A DNA stretch of 53,222 bases, counting the filler, from Bipalium vagum (Eukaryota), in assembly GCA_037834085.1 (NCBI GenBank). It is 3 parts of 3 records of this genome, joined end to end, with 100 filler letters (N's around TTAATTAATTAA, not from the genome) between each part and the next. Parts side by side here need not be neighbours in the genome. Positions count along the whole stretch, not along the records: positions 1 to 17,844 come from JBBMKC010049105.1; 2 more parts are not named here. The stretch is one strand, 5' to 3'. The notes under the pieces were generated by a model. The model saw only the letters and a program-made list of their open reading frames with translations. It did no database searches and was not told the DNA's origin. Positions 2,991-16,238 of this stretch are shown one piece after another. Both the position numbers and the translations under genes were made by a program. Position 1 is the first letter of the stretch; every line of letters starts with the position of its first letter.

Positions 2991-5138
2991 GTGTCCAATT
3001 ATTCATAATTATTATTATTCATCTTTTTTTACCATCGCGGTCAAAGAAATATGATATATTTATCTATAATACTAAGGATATTTTTTCTTCCTGTAGTTTC
3101 TCTTAGTTCTGACAGTCTACTTTTTCTACCTTTTCATTAGTCCTCGTTGTAAAGAATTTATTTCTCTGACAATAACAACTTTTTCCTTCAAATTTGCAAT
3201 TGAGAAATCGTCTTTCATATCGTCTTTCATATCGTCTTTCCTTTTTTCAGCTCAAACGTATGCCAATAAATAACAGAACACTTTTTATGTTTTTATGTAG
3301 TAAAATACATTTCCAAAATATTTTGGTTTTTTCCTTTATTATATTATCAAAACCAATTAACTTTTTAAAATATTTATCCAATTTATGCATTAATTGCATT
3401 TCATTTGCTTTTCCAAATAAGGTAAATTTTACTAGACAAAGTCTAAAAGAAGTTTCACCTCCTATTTTCCTTTCCTCAAATTCTTTTTTTTCACTAATAT
3501 TCGGTTTTATTTTATTTGTAAAAATTTCAGATAATTCATAATCAAAATAATCTTTTATATATTTAAATTCTGGTTAAAGAAAAGTAGTATTTAAAAATAA
3601 TAAGATTTATATAATTGAGTCAATTTATTTTGATTTACATTTAAGAAGAATAAGAAATAATGCTAACATTTTAGTATTCTTCAAAATTAGAGAAATCTCA
3701 AATTAATGCAAAAATTATCAGTTCATTCTGTTTATTTATGCACTTTACAAATAATTAATAAAATAATTATTTGTTATAAATTTAGAAGAAAAAAATTTTA
3801 ATATAAATTTTGATCAAATGAATAAAAATTTTTATTTATATATTAATTAAATCTTATATATTTTTTAAAAAGTGAGTGATTTATAAATGACTTAAATTTA
3901 GATGAAAATTACTATCATCAAGATTTAACAATAAAAAATGTGAATATTTCAAAATTTCTTTAAGTCCTTCAACAGCAACAAATGTAAATAAAATGGAAAT
4001 TTGACAAGATATATTAGGTTGTAAACAAATAATTGGTGGTTTATGAAACTTAATTTTTGCAGTATGAATTAATAATAATATTAGATTTATTAGAAGCATT
4101 AACAGGTTTTGAAATTGTTATTCAAGATATAAAAGTAGATGAAAATTTAATGTTATAAAAATAATTTCACTCTTGTTTATTTTCCTATCCATTCTTAAAG
4201 TTAGATTCATCAGAAGTAAAAATAATGATGGAGAAATATTTGGATAGATTTCAGATAAACTTATTGAACATGAACGTAAATATAATAATAAAGAATTTAA
4301 AATGAGAAAAGATTTGTATAAAAATAATAAATTTATTGGTAAATGATCATTTAAATTAACTTTTGGATTTTTTTAAATTTTACAGCAGAGTTATTTATGA
4401 AAGGAGAATAGATAATGATAAAGAAATATTTTAAGAACCAAGAAGAGATGCAAAAATAAATTTAATTGATTTAAACCATTTATTCTTAAATTACAATTAA
4501 ATCATGAAAAGGAATTAAAAGTAATAGTAAAATAGATGATTGAAAATCTATAAATTAATACATTAACTTAATATACATTAACATTAATATATTAACTTAA
4601 TCAATACATTTTGGAGACTGCATAAGAAAACTTTTACAAAGAAATAAAACTCGGTTTGTTTGAATAATATAATTTCTGAAATCATAATTTTAATCGTTTT
4701 CTAAACAAATGATGACCAATAGATCAGGTATTAAAATGTCTGGTAATTATTAGTAAATTATCTGGTACAAAAGTCGGCTGGCAGAAGGTAAATAATTCCT
4801 GTTAATTTTAATAAATTCAATGATTTTAACAATCTTCTAAACAAATCCTTTGAAAATTCACACCAGTTGCGTAAGACTGTCATGAATAATGAGAGGACTT
4901 TGAATTGCACACAAAATGAAAATATGAGTGAACCATGGAAACTATTTTACAAAGAAGGGCAATCGATATCTCAGAGATCTGAGATGAAACAAAAAATTAA
5001 GAAATCAGAGTACACAGACAATGATTTCTTGGATTAAATGGCAACATCGAAAGGTGTAATGATATATCAGCCAAATGATTAATAAATCTATTAATTTTTT
5101 TATTTATATAATAAATGTGATATACGTCAATTATTAGC

Positions 5139-6250
5139 ATGGAATCATATTCTATAAAAGATCGGGTGGAAATAATAAAAACCTACTATCAAAATTCAAG
5201 CTCAATCAAAGAAACATTTCGGAAACTTCGTATCTTATTTGGTCAACACAATCGTCCTCATTTGATCAAGAAATTTGAGGAAACTGGTTCAGTACAAAAT
5301 ATTTCATCGCCTGTACGTGCCAGACCATGTCGTTCAGTTAAGAACATTGCCAATGTTCGAAAAAGTGTTTCTGAAAATCCAAGTGTCAATTCCACGCCGT
5401 TCGCAGCATTTAGGCATTTCCAAAACAACTTCGTGAAGAATTTTAAAAAATGATTTACAGTTAAACGCGTACCAGATACAATTGACACAGAAATTAAAAC
5501 CAGCGGATTATATGCAGCGTCGAGAATTTGTTGAGTGGGTGCTTAAAAACAATCGATAAAGATTTCTTGAAGAAAATCATTTTCAGCGATGAAGCCCATT
5601 CTTAAGAGGTATGTTAACAAACAAAAGTGTCACATCTGAGGCATTGAAAATCCTAAAGAAATCATCGAAAAGGCAATCTATCCAGAACTTGTTACTGTTT
5701 GATGTGGTCTGTTGGCCGGTGGCGTCATTGGACCTTACTTCTTTGAAAAGGAATATGACATGTACGGTAAACGGAAAACGCTATCGAACATAAGTGAATT
5801 TTTGTGGAAACAATTGACCGATATGGATTTGAACGACATGTGGTTCCAATAGGACGGTACCACATGTCACACAGCCAAGAAAACAATCATTTTAAAGAAA
5901 GAATTATTTCACGAAACAGTGAAATCAACTGGCCACCAAGATCATGCGATTTATCCCCACTTGATTATTTTCTTTGGGATTATGTGAAAAGTAATAATAA
6001 TCCGCAAACAATAGACGTGCTCAAAGCTGAGATTCGGCGTGTAATTCGAGAAATTGTTCCGAATTTATCGTAATTTTCGACAAAAGAATAACTTCCTGTA
6101 AAATTAATCGTGGTGGACATTTGGTCGATATTGTTTTTCATGTATAATTGCCAAGCATTGTAGTTTATGTTAAAATGAAAATTGACTTTGTTAATTAAAG
6201 TGCGTTTTATTTAAAATAAACATCCTAAGTACCTTATTGGATAACCTTGT
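5139..6250 (+). mobile_element. Decayed Tc1/mariner-superfamily element (rosa/DD41D-like)
   Basis: Fragmented transposase: YSIKDRVEIIKTYY...HNRP, IIFSDEAH, WF(Q)*DG, NWPPRSCDLSPLDYFLWDYVKS. TIR-like 3' end near 6250. Confidence 0.85.
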
Positions 6251-6426
6251 ACATCAGTGCCACCTAGTTATTTCGACAGATCTCATAAGTGACAAGCGGA
6301 GTTAAACAAGAAATAACAAACAAATAATTTTATTTAGAAAAGCACAAAATTTTAAGATTAAAACTAAGAAATACCGTCAAATAATAAATGATTTTATAAG
6401 AAAAGCTATGAAAGTGTATATTTATT

Positions 6427-9286
6427 TTAAAATTTATCCAGGATAACTTTCATATTTTGGATCAGATCACATTTTATCTCAACACCCACGGCGCATAAGT
6501 TATCTTTTCCCCAAACCAATTGGCCGGATTGGTCTACGACGAGGTTTTCTTCGATTTGCGCCCAAACTGTCATCTCATTTGTCTCTTTCAGGTGCGGGCA
6601 GACTGGGTCATACAGTTCGAACGTTACACCTGAGGCACAGGAACTGGTATTGTTTTTGTTTTTTACAAGTTGCAACGTTATCGGCGGGACCATATTAGAT
6701 TGTTTAGAACCACTCTCGGCTGTGGTATTGGAACCTTTATTGGATAATTGCTGCTGTCCACACAAAATACCCAACAATTTTGCGTCACTGTTTTCATGAG
6801 ACGGACGAATTGCAACGATACACAAGTCGTTTGGAGTCAAGGAATAGCAGCGATCGGCGGCTTTGAGAGAGAATTGTTTTGTTCCACATTGCAATAGAAT
6901 AGTGAACGATCCTCTTTCGAAAACAATCGATTCAACCAATGCAATTCTCAAATCCAATCTGTTAGGATTATAGGCTTTCTTGTTGATTTTCACTCTTTTC
7001 CTTTCCGCTGGATATGCCGATGTGAAAAGTCGACTGATAATGTCCACTGATTGGCATTCATCGCGGTTGACGACATTGATTGGATCCAGAAACATTTTCG
7101 TCAGATATTCACAGAGCGCCAATTTAACGTCACCAGGGTGCATCAGATCATTGGTCAGTTGATGGGAAATGTCTGCGATGCTGGTGAAGGATACATTGCC
7201 ACCGTTTTCTTCAGAACGAGTAACCTTAAAACCATGAAGGTCCCCTTTGTCACGGTTATTGTTTTGGAGACAAGGCCAGATTATTTTCTCGATAATAATC
7301 AATGAAGGATCTCGATCGAGTTGTTTCGGGTCAAAGAAGGCCTTCTTCATCTTTCGATTGACGACTTCAAGACTATCACACATCGAGATCGATGTTGTGT
7401 CCTTCGGAGCGGTCTTGGTGCCGATTCGCGGTGACTTCATGGTTCCTTCTCCGTTCAAAGCCAGAATCATATCGTGGGTCACCAACACTGGAACTCGTTT
7501 CTCCAAATGCAATCGGGAACCGACTTTAGCACCGAACGTTCGGAAATCTTCGACGTGGGGATAGTCGCCCATCAATCGGACAGTAGCTCGAAGGAACATT
7601 TGATCGAGAGCCTGGATGCACGGGTAGACAACGGAAGAGAGACTGGTGATGGTTTCCGATTGGTTACCGACAATTTTCGTTATCATCTCGTTGCACTCGC
7701 GTTCTGTCATCTTTGAGAACGTCTGATACATTAGCAGAGCGTAATCCCGAGACAGTTGGAACTCTGATCCAATCACGATCAATAAGTTGGCTCTATTTCC
7801 GTGGAAAAGTTTGGTAAAGGTGCGTTCAAATACCTCTCGGTAGAGCGCAGCGCGGTGCTTCAGAAGGTTCCAGGCGGGCCGGTTAAGATTGTGGTGGGAG
7901 TGTAAGTGAGCCCCGATGTCCTCGATCATGATCACGACCTTCCAATCGCTGTTCGACAGCTTGGCTAATCGTCTCAGCGGAACCAGGTATCCCACATGAG
8001 GCTCTCCACTGGCACGAACACTCCACAGCACGGTTGGTTGATGATCAACGATGCCCGGAAACTGGTCAATTGGCACTTTGGTGATATCCGGGAACTCGGA
8101 AACCAAAGCTTGGAGATGAACAGGAAAATCCATGATCGACTCGGTCGTTTCCTTAGATTCTGGAAGCGATTCGACCACGTCGCTCGGATACGCCTCTTGG
8201 TCCAAATTTGGCTTGCCAGCCAATCGGAACTCGTCGGCCAGGTTTGACATCAGCAAGCACAGGGCGTCTTCGAGAATCTTCTTCAGCATGTCTTCATCGA
8301 TAGACTTTGTTGCCAAGTCGCTCTCTATCTCCTCCACTGTCTCGTACTTGTCGAGCGACGCCAGTCCCAATTGTGTCTTTATCGGAAGGATGACGTGTTT
8401 GATAAAGGCTAACAGTCCATTGGTCTGTGCCGTTGGCTCAGAGCAGTTTGCGTGTCTCAACTTTTTCGCAACCGTTTCCTTATTATCCAGCAGATCGATT
8501 TTAGAGTTTTCTTCCGACGCACTCATCTTGCCTCCTGTCAAGCCGGGAATCATCGGGTTCATCAAATGGGCACGCTTGGCGAATCCCAAATTCGGAAGAT
8601 ACTGCCAAAAAATAAATCAATAAAAGCTACACAAAATAAATTGATCGAATACTTTTTCAGCATATGTGAATATCTTCCGCTGATCCACACCGCCAAATTG
8701 AGCATCGACCCCCAAGAATTCCTCGTCCAGAGCTTGCAGTAATGGATATATTATACCGGATATGTATGGATCGGACGTCTGTTTCACCACTTCACAACCA
8801 GCTTTGGCAGCATCGTGAGCCGTTGTTATGCCAATTATCTGGTACACGTTGGCCGTGTAATTCTCTTTCAGTTGGTGCTCTGTACCGCGAACAAAGTGGA
8901 GCTTGTCTAGGGGGACTTTCAAGGCTTTCAACATTCCCTTTATGAGGACCTCATAGTATTCCGTTCGTTTCTGTAACAATTCCCATGGGGCTTTCATGTT
9001 GTCCAAATAGGCATGCAAATTGGCGAATAAAATTGTCACGTCACATCCGGCTTTAAGAAGATCACCAATCTTGGTCATTGGCACAAAATACGCAATATGT
9101 GGTCGACCTGTGGGAGCCGTTCCCCAATAAACGTTAAATATACCAGTTTTCTCAAGACATTCTTTCAGTTTATCAACTCCAATAAATTCCTGGATTTAAT
9201 TATGAAACAAAGTCGGACAATTTTTTCAGAAATCTTACTTGTAAATTACGAATCACAATCGACAATCTTTCCTCATTATCTTGCAT
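6427..9286 (-). CDS. YARS1: Cytoplasmic tyrosyl-tRNA synthetase, double-length (two TyrRS units plus degenerate EMAP II-like tail); exons 9286-9239, 9189-8653, 8601-6427; ~919 aa
   Basis: Manual splicing gives [16 protein letters not shown]|EFIG...[18 protein letters not shown]...[12 protein letters not shown]...[32 protein letters not shown]|YLPNLG...[18 protein letters not shown], typical eukaryotic cytoplasmic TyrRS. Phase-0 GT-AG introns 9190-9238 (49 nt) and 8602-8652 (51 nt). A second TyrRS-like unit follows in frame. Confidence 0.95.
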
Positions 9287-10652: not shown

Positions 10653-11662
10653 TTAATCCAAAAGTGAACAGAACCGAAAACGATGTCCGTGTTTCACACA
10701 TATTAAGCATAAATTCTTCAATGAACAGTTCATTCTTAAATGTTCACAAATACCACAACAAAAACACTGATTTAGTCGAAGCTGTTTGTCTCTTAGTGGT
10801 CGTAAATCTCTACATCTATTATAGAGCAATCTAGCAATTTGTTTCAAAGAAAATGTTGGAGGGCCTCTTCGTTCAACGGAAACTGTTTCATGTTTACTCG
10901 GTCTAACATCTCTGACATCACGGTGGTTAGCATCATCAGATTCTCTCATTCCACTTGCTATAATGATTCCATCATTCTGTTCTGATTGGTTTTGAGTCCA
11001 GGTATTCAAAGGCTTCAGTCGTCTTTGATATTGTTCACTCTGAACCATCTCTGCGCAACTCCGATGACGTACTGCGTTTACTTGCGCTATTACCTTTTCA
11101 ATAATTTTCTGTTCCCAATTCTCATAGAGCTTTGTCAAACTTCTGATATATTCTACTTTAATATATGATTTCTTCAAAAGTTTTTCTTTGAGTCCTTTGC
11201 TTCTTAATCTGTAACTATTTCTTCCCATGATAATCCAGAATACATTTCGTTGCTTAAGAGATTACAGATCCTAATCTCGAATGCTTCGTACCTCTCATCC
11301 ATGTTTTGCTTAACTTCTGCTAGCTCCATTACAATATTTAGAAAGTATTTTTCCACCATAAATGTTTCCTTAAACCAATTTATCGCTTCTTTTTTATCGT
11401 AGTTTTCTTTTTGAATTTCTTCACAATGTAGCAGGTTCTTCTGATAGTAAAAAATCAAGAACACCGATCAAACATAGATCATTTATGCTAAGACACTCGT
11501 CGATTACTTTTATCTAGCGCTCTGCATCTGACGAGCTCTGTTCATTAAATTTACAGATCTGTAAATTTAATAATTCTTGTGCTTGTTTTGGTAAAACATC
11601 CAGAAACTTTTTTCTTTCTTATCTTCGCATAACGATACTAATATTTTCGGTGTGGTCACCAG
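10653..11662 (-). mobile_element. Gypsy-like gag remnant with two CCHC knuckles and upstream PBS
   Basis: CFCCGICEHLRMNC and CLICVKHGHRFRFC; frameshifted upstream ORF 11204-11464; PBS-like TGGTGACCACACCG on the minus strand starting at ~11662. Confidence 0.7.
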
Positions 11663-11932: not shown

Positions 11933-13151
11933 TTAGGTATAGGCAAAAGTTTTAAACCATTTGTTTACTGTTATTTTACTAATCCAAATATTATCCAATA
12001 ACTGCCGCGAAATTTTACATTCGTAATTAATATATTAAATTTTATAAATATAATAATTTTATAAAAACCAAAATATCAGTCTTCTAAATAAGTGATGAAA
12101 AATTGTACATTCAGTGTTGCATAAGATATGAATTTGATCAAGGCAAAAATGCATCCCAGGCATTTAAATTAATATGTTCCGTTCTTGGTAATACATGTAG
12201 TACATGTAAACACTTGTATCGTCGATTCAGAGACAAAAATTTTGATGTTACCGATCGACTACGTAGTGATGCTCCATAGCTATTGGAATCAACCAAATTA
12301 GAAGAGCAGCTGAATGAAAATACATGCCAGGCGCAACCAGAGACAGTTACACGACATGGAAAAAATTCAGAAGGCTGGAAAGTGGATCTGCACGAACTTT
12401 TCGAAAGCAATATTTTATGCCGATAACAACATGCGCATCTCTTATTGCTAGACAAATAAAAAAGACTTTTATGGAAAATGGTCGCTGGAGATGAAAAATG
12501 AATTAATTACAATAATCCAAATTGTAAACATTTGTGGTTGGACCCTGGATTGCCAACTACTTAAGTTGTCAAAACAAATATTCACAATAAAAAAGTATTC
12601 GTTTGCATCTGGTGGGATATGAAATCACCCATTCATTATGACCTCCTCAAAGCTGGTGAAACCATTAATGCGAAACGTTATACCAAACAATTGTTGCATT
12701 TGGCTAAACAAATTGAGAAAAAAAGATCTTTATTCGGGCAAGGATTGCATAAGATTGTCCTGCTACATGACAATGCCAAACCGCATGTAGCGAAACATAC
12801 TGAGGAAAAAATTTTACAGTTAGGCTGGGAAGTTTTTCCCTATTCTCCAGACCTTTCTCCTATAGATTTTCATTTGTTTCGCTCAATGCTACATGAATTA
12901 GCTGGATGTCGTTTCAAAAATGTTGAACATATACGAGATTTTGTGAAGAATTATCTTGCATCAAAACCAATACCTTTCTATTTTTCCGGTATTTGGCAAT
13001 TACCTGAAAGATGGCAAAAAGTGATTTCCAATAATGGATATTATGTTGATGACTGATCTTTTGAATCCATGTGTATAAAAATAAATATATTACCTTTTTA
13101 ATAACATTTAATTTTTTTTAAAAATGGACTAAAACTTAGGCCTACACCTAA
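11933..13151 (+). mobile_element. Full-length inactivated mariner element (~1.22 kb)
   Basis: Imperfect TIRs TTAGGTATAGGCAAAAGTTTT / AAAACTTAGGCCTACACCTAA with TA on both sides. Motifs GDEK*I, LLHDNAKPH, PYSPDLSPIDFHLFRSM. Stops in the 5' half. Confidence 0.92.
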
Positions 13152-15188: not shown

Positions 15189-16238
15189 ATGAATTCATTT
15201 CAAGTAACCGAAAAATTTCACCAATATTTAAACGAAGACAAATGTTCTGAAGGATTGGCTACTGTAAAATCGTTACGAGATTTGATTGATAATTGTTCTG
15301 CGGCAACTATAACTGAATATGATTCAATCCTGAAGAAAGCAATTGAAGAATTATCTCAATCTGAACATTCCCTGGCTCCAATCAAGTCGGCATCGGAATT
15401 GTTCATGAGATATATCACGTATTGTAAATTAGACAACCGTTTGGTTGATTTCAAATCAAATTTATTGAACAAGGCCGATTTGTTCATTGATAAAGTAAAT
15501 TTTTTTCTATGACCACTTGTCCCGGTTACCTATTCATAATTTTCAGATCTCCAAGAATATCGACATAATTGCAGATCTTTGTGGTAATCTCTGCGGCAGT
15601 CTACAGAAAACCGTTTCCAACATATTGATATTGAGTGGGTCGAAGATTGTCTGGGAAACATTGGTAGAATTTGTGAGGAACTATCGTCGAAAGAAAATCA
15701 ATATTTACATCATCGGTCATCCTAAACCAAATTATTTGCTCAAAATGTCCCAATTATCGACCGGTAAGACAAATCGATAATAAATAATTTTAAAATGTTA
15801 ACTTCCCTAGCGATTTCATTTATTCCAATCGATTTTCGGTCATTGACATTTTATTTGAAATCGATCCACGTAGTTTTGGTTGGTGCCGAGGCCGTCGTTG
15901 GCAACGGAGGTATCATTAATGAAATGGGAACATTCAATTTGGCTATTTTGGCTAAACAGTTCAATATCGATTTTTTCGTCTTGACGGAAATCATTCGTTT
16001 CAGTCAGCTTTACCCGCTTGATCAAAATGATATTCCCAACGAGTTCCAGCGTCGTTGTGTCCGTCCCAATAGCGATAACAACAACAACAGTGAATACAAC
16101 GGCGAGACCGCACTCACCACCATGCTGCCACCTGAGGTTGATTACACGCCTCCAGAGTACATCAGGATGATTGTCACCGACATTGGTTACATTCCCCCGT
16201 CCAACGTAGGGGAAGAAGTTTTCAAGCTTTATTTATAA
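15189..16238 (+). CDS. EIF2B1: Translation initiation factor eIF2B subunit alpha; exons 15189-15494, 15547-15763, 15811-16238; 316 aa
   Basis: Three ORFs join in frame through GT-AG introns of 52 nt (15495-15546) and 47 nt (15764-15810). Motifs SASELFMRYIT, VLVGAEAVVGNGGIINEMGT, RFSQLYPLDQNDIP, VDYTPPEYI, PSNVGEEVFKLYL match eIF2B alpha. Confidence 0.92.

What the first reader, a model, noticed from the sequence alone, without database searches (positions are those of the whole stretch)
6427..9286. Double-length pseudo-dimeric TyrRS with apparent division of labour in an animal-type gene
Seen: two tandem TyrRS units, each ending in AYP. Unit 1 (~9286-8185) keeps catalytic motifs ([31 protein letters not shown]) but its anticodon domain is eroded (KKAFC to RHANC, no R...GG hairpin, HPGDLK to DEDMLK). 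Unit 2 (~8130-7010) has decayed catalytic motifs ([20 protein letters not shown]) yet retains [14 protein letters not shown] and HPGDVK. Established: TyrRS is normally a homodimer binding tRNA across subunits, and an asymmetric single-chain pseudo-dimer with this split is known in trypanosomatids (Leishmania). Inference: independent convergent origin in an animal lineage. It may be shared by related invertebrates, which I cannot check.
Basis: partly seen in the sequence, partly recalled or inferred. Interest (0 to 1): 0.82.

Follow-up and report, generated by a model that had tools for sequence, protein, structure and literature searches.

The report
Double-length single-chain TyrRS pseudo-dimer gene
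This is a real three-exon animal gene for a 919-residue tyrosyl-tRNA synthetase made of two fused copies, one keeping the catalytic site and the other the anticodon-binding site; flatworms, nematodes and crabs carry the same fused gene, so it is not unique to this lineage.

Summary
A minus-strand gene (9286-6427; two introns of 49 and 51 nt) encodes 919 aa. It has two full TyrRS units, both over the Pfam tRNA-synt_1b cut-off, plus a strongly diverged EMAPII-like tail.

Unit 1 keeps every catalytic motif and has lost the anticodon-domain motifs. Unit 2 shows the reverse pattern. The junction between the units lies inside one uninterrupted 724-codon exon. A model of the closest full-length relative superposes on the Leishmania pseudo-dimer over about 738 columns.

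The evolutionary inference is only partly right. The gene is animal-type and unrelated to the trypanosomatid fusion. However, the same architecture with the same polarity occurs in Macrostomum, Schistosoma, Hymenolepis, nematodes and the crab Scylla. In trees, the N units and the C units form separate clades with matching internal order. AU tests reject a duplication private to this lineage (p 0.0003) or to this lineage plus flatworms (p 4e-5).

So this is a new member of a known kind. No RNA evidence could be obtained.

The more novel result is a side finding. In this genome the cytosolic TrpRS is also a fused pseudo-dimer, with complementary decay in the opposite order. I found that form only in this genome and two related organisms.

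The parts
9239..9286 (-). Exon 1: start codon and the first 16 residues, ending in RNLQ
   Evidence: It is the first ATG after an in-frame stop, and a GT donor follows at 9238. The same ..RNLQ|GT junction is present in the relative's genomic contig L001.
9190..9238 (-). Intron 1, 49 nt, GT..AG
8653..9189 (-). Exon 2 (179 aa): N-terminal part of the unit 1 Rossmann fold. Motifs: YWGTAPTG 9106-9129, HIAY 9088-9099, YPLLQALD 8725-8748, QFGGVDQ 8680-8700
   Evidence: Pfam E 8.8e-34. E 1.3e-76 to human TyrRS residues 20-197. Motif coordinates.
8602..8652 (-). Intron 2, 51 nt, GT..AG, phase 0 after AEK
   Evidence: The relative's contig L001 has an intron at the same position.
6427..8601 (-). Exon 3 (724 aa plus TAA): the rest of unit 1, the linker, all of unit 2 and the C-terminal domain, in one uninterrupted frame
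   Evidence: The AlphaFold model has mean pLDDT 74.
8515..8529 (-). Unit 1 KMSAS loop (class I KMSKS signature), intact
8185..8466 (-). Unit 1 anticodon-binding domain, eroded. KKAFC has become KKLRHANC (8443-8466), the R..GG hairpin is absent, and HPGDLK has become DEDMLK (8281-8298). The unit ends in EAYP (8185-8196).
   Evidence: Motif table, coordinates
8032..8184 (-). Inter-unit linker. The first ~13 residues are low-confidence; the rest is modelled confidently with short helices just ahead of the unit 2 HMM match.
   Evidence: pLDDT is below 50 at exon-3 residues 138-150 and about 83-93 for residues 151-190. The equivalent linker in the relative's model is disordered.
7429..8031 (-). Unit 2 Rossmann domain: the fold is kept but catalytic residues have decayed. 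LWSVRASG 8005-8028 (Tyr39 replaced by Leu), HVGY 7987-7998, YPCIQALD 7603-7626, VRLMGDYP 7558-7581 (Gln188 and GGxDQ lost), TMKSP 7429-7443 (KMSKS lost).
   Evidence: Pfam E 6.6e-31. Motif table. The model matches human TyrRS at TM 0.75-0.78 with 24% identity.
7009..7353 (-). Unit 2 anticodon-binding domain, intact: KMKKAFF 7333-7353, RSEENGGN hairpin 7195-7218, HPGDVK 7123-7140, SAYP 7009-7020
   Evidence: pLDDT is 85-92. dN/dS is 0.18 against the partial paralogous copy.
6430..7008 (-). C-terminal domain of 193 aa: a strongly diverged remnant of the EMAPII-like (OB-fold) domain of metazoan TyrRS
   Evidence: No Pfam hit. Profile-profile comparison aligns it collinearly with EMAPII domains (probability 84.6%, E 6.8e-6, 141 columns). 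The model is rich in beta strands.
6421..6426 (-). AATAAA directly after the stop codon, with a second copy at 6329-6334: likely poly(A) signals (inferred)
   Evidence: Sequence read; there is no transcript evidence

Best explanation
The gene encodes the cell's cytosolic tyrosyl-tRNA synthetase as a single 919-residue chain that folds back on itself into an intramolecular pseudo-dimer.

A canonical TyrRS is a homodimer. Each tRNA(Tyr) lies across it, with the acceptor end in the active site of one subunit and the anticodon on the C-terminal helical domain of the other. Here the two subunits are fused and only one of the two symmetric tRNA sites has been kept:
- The unit 1 Rossmann domain has intact Tyr39, HIAY, Tyr166/Gln170/Asp173, QFGGVDQ and KMSAS. 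It activates tyrosine and charges the tRNA.
- The unit 2 helical domain has intact KMKKAFF, the R..GG hairpin and HPGDVK. It holds the anticodon.
- The unit 1 anticodon domain and the unit 2 active site are vestigial scaffolds.
- The EMAPII-like tail of metazoan TyrRS survives only after unit 2 and is strongly diverged.

Shown here: the gene structure, the two folds, the complementary motif pattern and the kinship to other animal double-length TyrRS. Inferred: one transcript, one active site, cross-unit tRNA binding and monomeric state.

On origin, the fusion is inherited rather than new. It predates the split of this lineage from flatworms. It probably goes back to an early protostome, and it arose independently of the trypanosomatid and plant fusions.
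For: One gene:
- The junction of the units lies inside one 724-codon exon.
- The exon joins restore the canonical TyrRS sequence.
- An independent genomic contig of a relative has the same exon structure.
- A relative's 878-aa protein carries both units.

Two TyrRS folds:
- Both units pass the Pfam cut-off.
- The window's own unit 2 model matches human TyrRS at TM 0.75-0.78.

Pseudo-dimer arrangement:
- The full-length model of relative P0002 has pLDDT 72 and pTM 0.68.
- It best matches the Leishmania major and L. donovani double-length TyrRS over 734-740 columns, TM by target 0.73-0.77.

Division of labour:
- In the motif table, every N unit keeps the catalytic residues and loses KKAFC, the hairpin and HPGDLK. 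Every C unit does the reverse.
- dN/dS is 0.18 over the unit 2 anticodon domain plus tail.

Probably the only cytosolic TyrRS:
- Six-frame searches of the 440-Mb assembly with PF00579, a canonical TyrRS and TIGR00234 find only four things: this gene, a 5'-truncated copy of its 3' third, a stand-alone EMAPII-domain hit on contig C207897 that carries no TyrRS catalytic or anticodon-domain match, and a bacterial-type (mitochondrial) TyrRS.

Origin:
- N units form one clade (92/92) and C units another (99/97).
- The window groups with flatworms in both trees (97/77 and 98/85).
- AU tests give p 0.0003 and 3.6e-5 against lineage-restricted duplications.

Published work:
- Trypanosomatid TyrRS has the same asymmetry, and T. 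brucei needs both units for activity (PMC8319005, read).
Against: - There is no transcript or protein evidence.
- The pseudo-dimer geometry was modelled on the 878-aa relative, not on the window protein.
- Unit 2 still keeps HVGY and YPCIQALD, so some residual ligand binding cannot be excluded.
- The assembly has 272,664 contigs, so failure to find a canonical TyrRS is weak evidence of absence.
- The deep single origin rests partly on very long C-unit branches and on N-unit anticodon-domain columns that may have eroded convergently. With catalytic-domain columns only, the N units do not form one supported clade.
Confidence: 0.8

Rival explanations
1. The fusion arose separately in this lineage, or separately in flatworms, nematodes and crustaceans. 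On this view, the clustering of C units and of N units is long-branch attraction plus convergent erosion.
For: - C-unit end branches are very long (1.5-3.0 changes per site), and the tree tool flags that long branches meet.
- With catalytic-domain columns only, the N units fall into four unconnected groups in a polytomy.
- Leishmania reached the same polarity independently, so polarity is not evidence of common descent.
Against: - The N and C subtrees mirror each other. In both, the window groups with flatworms, the nematodes group together, and the P0010/P0012 pair stays together.
- The window still groups with flatworms on catalytic columns alone (SH-aLRT 85).
- AU tests reject a duplication in the window lineage (p 0.0003) and in the window-plus-flatworm group (p 3.6e-5).
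- No canonical single-length TyrRS from a flatworm, nematode or crab appears among the 120 listed hits.
Confidence: 0.2
2. Both units are active synthetases, as proposed for Arabidopsis At1g28350, so the chain carries two working active sites.
For: Unit 2 keeps the HIGH-position motif HVGY and YPCIQALD, which hold the Tyr166, Gln170 and Asp173 equivalents.
Against: Unit 2 has lost Tyr39 (now Leu), Gln188 (now Arg), the GGxDQ motif and the KMSKS loop (now TMKSP). Unit 1 has lost the anticodon-domain motifs that a second tRNA site would need.
Confidence: 0.04
3. The double-length protein is a side paralogue with a non-translational role, or unit 2 is a decaying appendage. The working cytosolic TyrRS would then lie in a part of the genome missing from this fragmentary assembly.
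For: The assembly is highly fragmented (272,664 contigs). NCBI labels a Gigantopelta protein 'ligase 2' and a crab protein 'cytoplasmic-like'.
Against: - Three six-frame searches find no second cytosolic TyrRS.
- The catalytic part of unit 1 is 65% identical to a canonical bivalve enzyme.
- The anticodon-domain motifs of unit 2 are conserved in every lineage.
- dN/dS is 0.18.
- Unit 2 is confidently folded.
Confidence: 0.06
4. It is an artefact: two neighbouring genes wrongly read as one, contamination, or transfer from a trypanosomatid or a plant.
For: None was found.
Against: - No stop codon or splice site is needed between the units, because they share one exon.
- The same architecture appears in an independent assembly and in a database protein.
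- Exon 2 scores 260 bits against human TyrRS, 37 bits against Leishmania and 26 bits against the plant enzyme.
- The gene sits between mariner-type transposon remnants and an eIF2B gene with similarly short introns.
Confidence: 0.01

Closest known systems
Double-length TyrRS of trypanosomatids (Leishmania major 3P0H/3P0I/3P0J, L. donovani 5USF, T. brucei)
   Same: - A single chain of two TyrRS units.
- The N unit is catalytic with a damaged anticodon domain. The C unit has lost KMSKS but keeps anticodon binding.
- The same three-dimensional pseudo-dimer: the relative's model matches at TM 0.73-0.77 over about 738 columns.
   Different: - There is no common origin. Sequence identity is only 16-19%.
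- Exon 2 scores E 4e-8 against Leishmania but 1e-76 against human TyrRS.
- The animal protein carries an EMAPII-like tail after unit 2, and the gene has introns.
Predicted double-length TyrRS of other animals: Macrostomum lignano, Schistosoma turkestanicum, Hymenolepis microstoma, the nematodes Acanthocheilonema, Auanema and Pristionchus, and the crab Scylla paramamosain
   Same: - The same architecture, polarity and motif pattern.
- Both units of the window protein are sister to the flatworm units.
- An EMAPII tail follows unit 2 in the flatworm and crab proteins.
   Different: - Only 24-31% identical over exon 3.
- The window lineage has a long branch, and its EMAPII-like tail has diverged beyond Pfam recognition.
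- The nematode proteins lack the tail.
Arabidopsis thaliana At1g28350 (double-length cytosolic TyrRS of plants)
   Same: Two TyrRS units in one chain (PMC7564348 and PMC9437257, read).
   Different: Both plant units are reported to keep HIGH and KMSK and to look active. The plant enzyme is only distantly related to this gene by sequence (E 6e-5 for exon 2).
Canonical metazoan cytosolic TyrRS (human YARS1, about 528 aa: mini-TyrRS plus EMAPII-like domain)
   Same: Unit 1 aligns residue for residue with human residues 20-197 and keeps all catalytic residues. The domain order catalytic, anticodon, EMAPII is kept at the C-terminal end.
   Different: The canonical enzyme is a homodimer of identical chains with two equivalent tRNA sites. 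Here the dimer is covalent and asymmetric.

Membership tests
Class Ic tyrosyl-tRNA synthetase, archaeal/eukaryotic type (Pfam PF00579) | Rossmann-fold catalytic domain matching the family profile above its cut-off | tested here: met
   Unit 1 scores 117.6 bits on exon 2 alone. Exon 3, holding unit 2 and the C-terminal part of unit 1's catalytic domain, scores 108.1 bits (two stretches; best stretch in unit 2, residues 184-500). The cut-off is 21.1 bits. In the genome search unit 2 alone scores 60.5 bits, also over the cut-off.
Class Ic tyrosyl-tRNA synthetase, archaeal/eukaryotic type (Pfam PF00579) | Catalytic signatures HIGH and KMSKS plus the tyrosine-binding residues (human Tyr39, Tyr166, Gln170, Asp173, Gln188) | tested here: met
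   Met in unit 1 (HIAY, KMSAS, all five residues). Not met in unit 2 (Leu at 39, Arg at 188, TMKSP).
Class Ic tyrosyl-tRNA synthetase, archaeal/eukaryotic type (Pfam PF00579) | C-terminal helical anticodon-binding domain with KKAFC, the R..GG hairpin and HPGDLK. My own recollection is that the His and Asp of this motif contact G34 in the M. jannaschii complex. | tested here: met
   Met in unit 2 only ([21 protein letters not shown]). Unit 1 has KKLRHANC, no hairpin and DEDMLK.
Asymmetric double-length TyrRS pseudo-dimer (Leishmania type), as a way of working | Two TyrRS units in one polypeptide | tested here: met
   The junction between the units lies inside one open exon.
Asymmetric double-length TyrRS pseudo-dimer (Leishmania type), as a way of working | Complementary loss: the N unit is catalytic without an anticodon site, and the C unit is the reverse | tested here: met
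   Motif table.
Asymmetric double-length TyrRS pseudo-dimer (Leishmania type), as a way of working | The units pack as in a TyrRS dimer | tested here: inconclusive
   Met for the 878-aa relative's model against 3P0J and 5USF (TM 0.73-0.77). The window's full chain could not be modelled, because its exons may not be joined.
Asymmetric double-length TyrRS pseudo-dimer (Leishmania type), as a way of working | One active site per chain, with both units needed for charging | not testable with these tools
   This needs enzymology. It has been shown for T. brucei according to PMC8319005.
Trypanosomatid double-length TyrRS, as a lineage (common descent) | The halves group with the trypanosomatid halves | tested here: not met
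   Exon 2 scores 260 bits against human TyrRS and 37 bits against Leishmania. Exon 3 scores 176 against 30 bits. No trypanosomatid sequence was available for the tree.
Animal double-length TyrRS clade (flatworms, nematodes, crab) | The N unit groups with their N units and the C unit with their C units | tested here: met
   N clade support 92/92 and C clade 99/97; the window groups with flatworms at 97/77 and 98/85. AU tests. The deep node is not recovered with catalytic columns alone.
Metazoan TyrRS EMAPII-like C-terminal domain (Pfam PF01588 tRNA_bind) | A match to the tRNA_bind profile | tested here: not met
   No Pfam hit at E up to 0.1. Only a collinear profile-profile match (probability 84.6%, E 6.8e-6), so this is a diverged remnant.

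The most novel reading that the evidence does not exclude
In this lineage both class Ic synthetases, which normally work as homodimers binding tRNA across subunits, have been turned into covalent asymmetric pseudo-dimers, and the two have opposite polarity.
- TyrRS has its catalytic unit first and its anticodon unit second. This form is inherited and shared with flatworms and others.
- TrpRS has its anticodon unit first and its catalytic unit second. I found this form only in this genome and two related organisms.

I found no paper in the held library describing a double-length TrpRS with division of labour. If real, it would be a second, independent natural case. It would show that a half-of-the-sites dimer can be reduced to a single tRNA site in either order.
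Probability: 0.55. Interest if true: 0.7.

Novelty: new member of a known kind. Interest (0 to 1): 0.45.

Why it matters
For TyrRS itself the value lies in context. The asymmetric single-chain TyrRS is usually treated as a peculiarity of trypanosomatid parasites. This gene belongs to a widespread but barely discussed animal family that includes parasitic flatworms and nematodes and reached the same solution independently.

That makes the pseudo-dimer a repeatable evolutionary outcome of a dimer that binds tRNA across its subunits. It also marks a structural difference from the human enzyme in helminths.

The TrpRS side finding, if confirmed, extends the principle to the sister enzyme with the opposite domain order. 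It offers a natural experiment on whether the order of the units matters.

Tried and rejected
I did not try to get the reads another way.
- Joined protein. The exons were searched separately by reference, and the 878-aa relative P0002 served as proxy for the full chain.
- Key papers. Larson et al. 2011 and Barros-Alvarez et al. 2017 are not in the held library. Statements about Leishmania therefore come from papers that cite them.
- The 'nematodes' mention. The one phrase 'also found in nematodes' (PMC7564348) cites only the Leishmania papers, so it may be a slip. I do not count it as a description of the animal family.
- C-terminal domain. Pfam found nothing on it.
- Catalytic-only N-unit tree. 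It was too poorly resolved to test the deep single origin, and the careful search did not finish.
- Gigantopelta 'ligase 2' (P0003, 1151 aa). It consists of three near-identical repeats with intact motifs and groups with canonical mollusc TyrRS. I treat it as a recent tandem copy or an assembly or annotation effect, not a member of the family.
- Species identity. It could not be determined. Both halves point to a flatworm or a near relative, which is an inference from the trees.
Full report
**Gene and observation**

The finding's coordinates match a protein-coding gene on the minus strand exactly. The first ATG after an in-frame stop is at 9286.
- Exon 1 (9286-9239) encodes 16 residues ending in RNLQ.
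- A 49-nt GT..AG intron follows (9238-9190).
- Exon 2 (9189-8653) encodes 179 residues.
- A 51-nt GT..AG intron follows (8652-8602).
- Exon 3 (8601-6427) encodes 724 residues and ends in TAA.

Both joins restore the canonical TyrRS sequence (..RNLQ|EFIG.. and ..AEK|YLPNLGF..). The total is 919 residues. AATAAA follows the stop directly.

Pfam tRNA-synt_1b matches exon 2 at E 8.8e-34. It matches exon 3 residues 184-500 at E 6.6e-31, over profile positions 5-291 of 292.

**One chain**

The end of unit 1, the linker and all of unit 2 lie in a single uninterrupted exon. No splice or read-through is needed to join the units.

A genomic contig from a related organism (L001, run SRR33002330) has the same exon joins and a continuous frame across both units. 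A second relative's database protein (P0002, 878 aa) carries both units.

The exons were searched by reference, one at a time.

**Division of labour**

I aligned both units of the window protein and of eleven other double-length proteins with canonical TyrRS. Numbering follows a 528-aa vertebrate enzyme whose numbering matches human at every motif checked.
- Unit 1 keeps Tyr39, the HIGH-position motif HIAY, Tyr166/Gln170/Asp173, Gln188 within QFGGVDQ, and KMSAS.
- Unit 1 has KKLRHANC in place of KKAFC, no R..GG hairpin, and DEDMLK in place of HPGDLK.
- Unit 2 has Leu at position 39, Arg at 188, no GGxDQ, and TMKSP in place of KMSKS.
- Unit 2 keeps [15 protein letters not shown] and HPGDVK.

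The units are 28% identical over 155 residues of the Rossmann part. Their C-terminal halves show no detectable pairwise similarity.

From my own knowledge of the M. jannaschii TyrRS-tRNA complex, the His and Asp of the HPxDLK motif contact anticodon base G34. On that basis unit 1 has lost the anticodon contact and unit 2 has kept it.

**Structure**

The AlphaFold model of exon 3 has mean pLDDT 74, with 80-95 across unit 2. It matches human mini-TyrRS at TM 0.75-0.78 by target with 24% identity. Unit 2 therefore has the TyrRS fold.

The full-length model of relative P0002 has pLDDT 72, pTM 0.68 and a disordered linker. It best matches the Leishmania major and L. donovani double-length enzymes over 734-740 columns, TM by target 0.73-0.77. 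Human TyrRS matches only one unit. So the two units pack as in the known pseudo-dimer, shown by proxy.

**C-terminal domain**

The last 193 residues have no Pfam hit. A profile built from the window and its two relatives aligns collinearly with the EMAPII-like domain of canonical and double-length animal TyrRS (hhalign probability 84.6%, E 6.8e-6, 141 columns). The model is beta-rich there. I read this as a strongly diverged EMAPII-like remnant.

**Animal type, not transferred**

| Query | Human TyrRS | Yeast | Leishmania | Plant |
|---|---|---|---|---|
| Exon 2 | E 1.3e-76 | 1.5e-65 | 4e-8 | 6e-5 |
| Exon 3 | E 1.3e-50 | 4.2e-38 | 2.8e-6 | 2.4e-13 |

Exon 2 is also 65% identical to a bivalve enzyme.

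**Not private to this lineage**

The word-index search with exon 3 returned two close unnamed relatives at 51% and 47% identity. It also returned double-length TyrRS from:
- Macrostomum lignano
- Schistosoma turkestanicum
- Hymenolepis microstoma
- the nematodes Acanthocheilonema, Auanema and Pristionchus
- the crab Scylla paramamosain
- several unnamed assemblies

All have the same order of units and the same complementary motif pattern.

I built a careful maximum-likelihood tree of 50 rows. Rows were the N units, the C units and canonical TyrRS from vertebrates, insects, a bivalve, a rotifer, acoels, an ichthyosporean and fungi. The window was represented by exon 2 and by unit 2.
- The N units form one clade (92/92) and the C units another (99/97).
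- The internal order is mirrored between the two clades.
- The window plus relatives group with flatworms in both (97/77 and 98/85).

AU tests reject a tree that holds the window lineage's N and C units together (p 0.0003). They also reject one that holds all window and flatworm units together (p 3.6e-5).

Caveats:
- The C-unit branches are very long.
- With catalytic-domain columns only, the N units no longer form one supported clade, although the window still groups with flatworms at 85.

My conclusions on origin:
- The fusion predates the split of this lineage from flatworms. This is well supported.
- A single origin early in protostomes is favoured but not proven.
- The species itself is unidentified. 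It is probably a flatworm or a close relative, which is an inference.

**Only cytosolic TyrRS?**

I ran six-frame searches of the species' 440-Mb assembly (272,664 contigs) with PF00579, a canonical bivalve TyrRS and TIGR00234. They found:
- this gene;
- a 5'-truncated copy of its 3' third on contig C212202 (92% nucleotide identity over 1060 nt, open frame, dN/dS 0.18);
- an EMAPII-domain gene on C207897;
- pieces of a bacterial-type, presumably mitochondrial, TyrRS on C119581.

No canonical cytosolic TyrRS turned up. Given the fragmentation, this is suggestive only.

**Mechanism proposed**

A canonical TyrRS dimer binds each tRNA across both subunits (established; restated in PMC8319005). Fusing the subunits lets one of the two symmetric sites decay. 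What remains is the unit 1 active site together with the unit 2 anticodon domain, that is, one tRNA site per chain. The other two half-sites persist as scaffold. According to PMC8319005, the trypanosomatid enzyme has the same asymmetry and the T. brucei enzyme needs both units. The step from motif pattern to function is an inference here.

**Literature**

The papers I could read treat the double-length TyrRS as a trypanosomatid or 'parasitic' feature, or as a plant one. One phrase says the organisation is 'also found in nematodes' (PMC7564348), but it cites only the Leishmania papers. I found no held paper that describes the animal family. Its members are, however, present and named as TyrRS in public protein sets. 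I therefore rate the finding a new member of a known kind.

**Side finding: TrpRS**

Typing the other PF00579 hits showed that the cytosolic-type TrpRS on contig C116678 is also a tandem double.
- One open frame runs from the end of unit 1, through an acidic linker, into the start of unit 2.
- Unit 1 has lost GRGPSS/HxGH, TDDEK, the AIDQDPYFR block and KMSAS. It keeps the anticodon-domain blocks FSGGRDTIEEH..GG and MLTGELK.
- Unit 2 shows the reverse pattern.
- So TrpRS shows the same division of labour in the opposite order.

An exhaustive profile search and two word-index searches found this form only in two other places. One is an 825-aa protein (P0288; 52% identical in unit 1 and 66% in unit 2). 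The other is a 470-aa fragment (P0121) from the same run that holds the TyrRS relative.

A separate 793-aa double TrpRS of crustacean affinity (P0122) shows a different, partial asymmetry. An isopod protein and three plant proteins are double-length; in the isopod protein both units are intact (the plant proteins were not examined), and some of these may be tandem genes merged by annotation. I found no paper on a double-length TrpRS.

**Verdict**

The claim of a new convergent origin in this lineage is not supported, because the gene is inherited and shared with flatworms, nematodes and a crab. Interest is moderate for TyrRS itself. The parallel TrpRS pseudo-dimer is the more novel lead.

Noticed in passing
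Own genome contig C116678 (L007:2388-5080, + strand): The cytosolic-type TrpRS is also a fused tandem double, with complementary decay in the opposite order to TyrRS. Unit 1 is catalytically dead but keeps the anticodon-domain motifs. Unit 2 keeps GRGPSS..HLGH and KMNAS but has an eroded anticodon domain. One open frame (3397-4044) spans the junction. Orthologues were found only in P0288 (825 aa) and P0121 (470 aa, from the same run as the TyrRS relative).
   Followed up: partly
Own genome contig C212202 (L016:1452-2511), matching window 7453-6401: A 5'-truncated second copy of the 3' third of the TyrRS gene, starting inside unit 2 at the TMKSP loop. It is 92% identical in nucleotides, its frame is still open for 339 aa, and dN/dS is 0.18. 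The flanks do not match the window. It could be a partial paralogue or a divergent haplotype with a rearrangement.
   Followed up: partly
P0122 (793 aa, JGI), P0271 (Armadillidium nasatum, 921 aa), P0272-P0274 (Arabis, Oxalis, Microthlaspi): Other double-length TrpRS predictions exist. P0122 has a different, partial asymmetry: unit 1 lost KMSAS, while unit 2 lost part of the HIGH region and its anticodon motifs. In the isopod protein both units are intact; the plant proteins were not examined unit by unit. These may be tandem genes merged by annotation.
   Followed up: partly
P0003 (Gigantopelta aegis 'tyrosine--tRNA ligase 2', 1151 aa): It consists of three near-identical TyrRS repeats with intact motifs and groups with canonical mollusc TyrRS. 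This looks like a very recent tandem copy or an assembly or annotation effect, not a member of the asymmetric family.
   Followed up: partly
window 5139-6073 (+) and 12619-13056 (+): Broken mariner/Tc1-type transposase remnants flank the gene. They carry a DUF4817 helix-turn-helix domain, Transposase_1/DDE_3 hits and a ..DLSPLDYFLW.. motif.
   Followed up: partly
window 10653-11228 (-): A 191-aa open frame with a CCHC zinc-knuckle-like motif and no Pfam hit. It may be a retroelement gag remnant.
   Followed up: no
window 15189-16238 (+): A multi-exon gene of the IF-2B family, eIF2B alpha/beta/delta type (Pfam E 4.6e-28 for the last exon), with short introns like those of the TyrRS gene.
   Followed up: partly
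Own genome contigs C119581 (L017:3524-4622) and C219404 (L004): Exon pieces of a bacterial-type TyrRS and a bacterial-type TrpRS (GIQPTGFPHIGNY, KMSKS), presumably the mitochondrial enzymes. Both look single-length.
   Followed up: no
window 6500-9000 against its flanks: The coding region has 42-49% G+C, against 29-34% in the flanking DNA. This makes the gene stand out in the composition profile.
   Followed up: no
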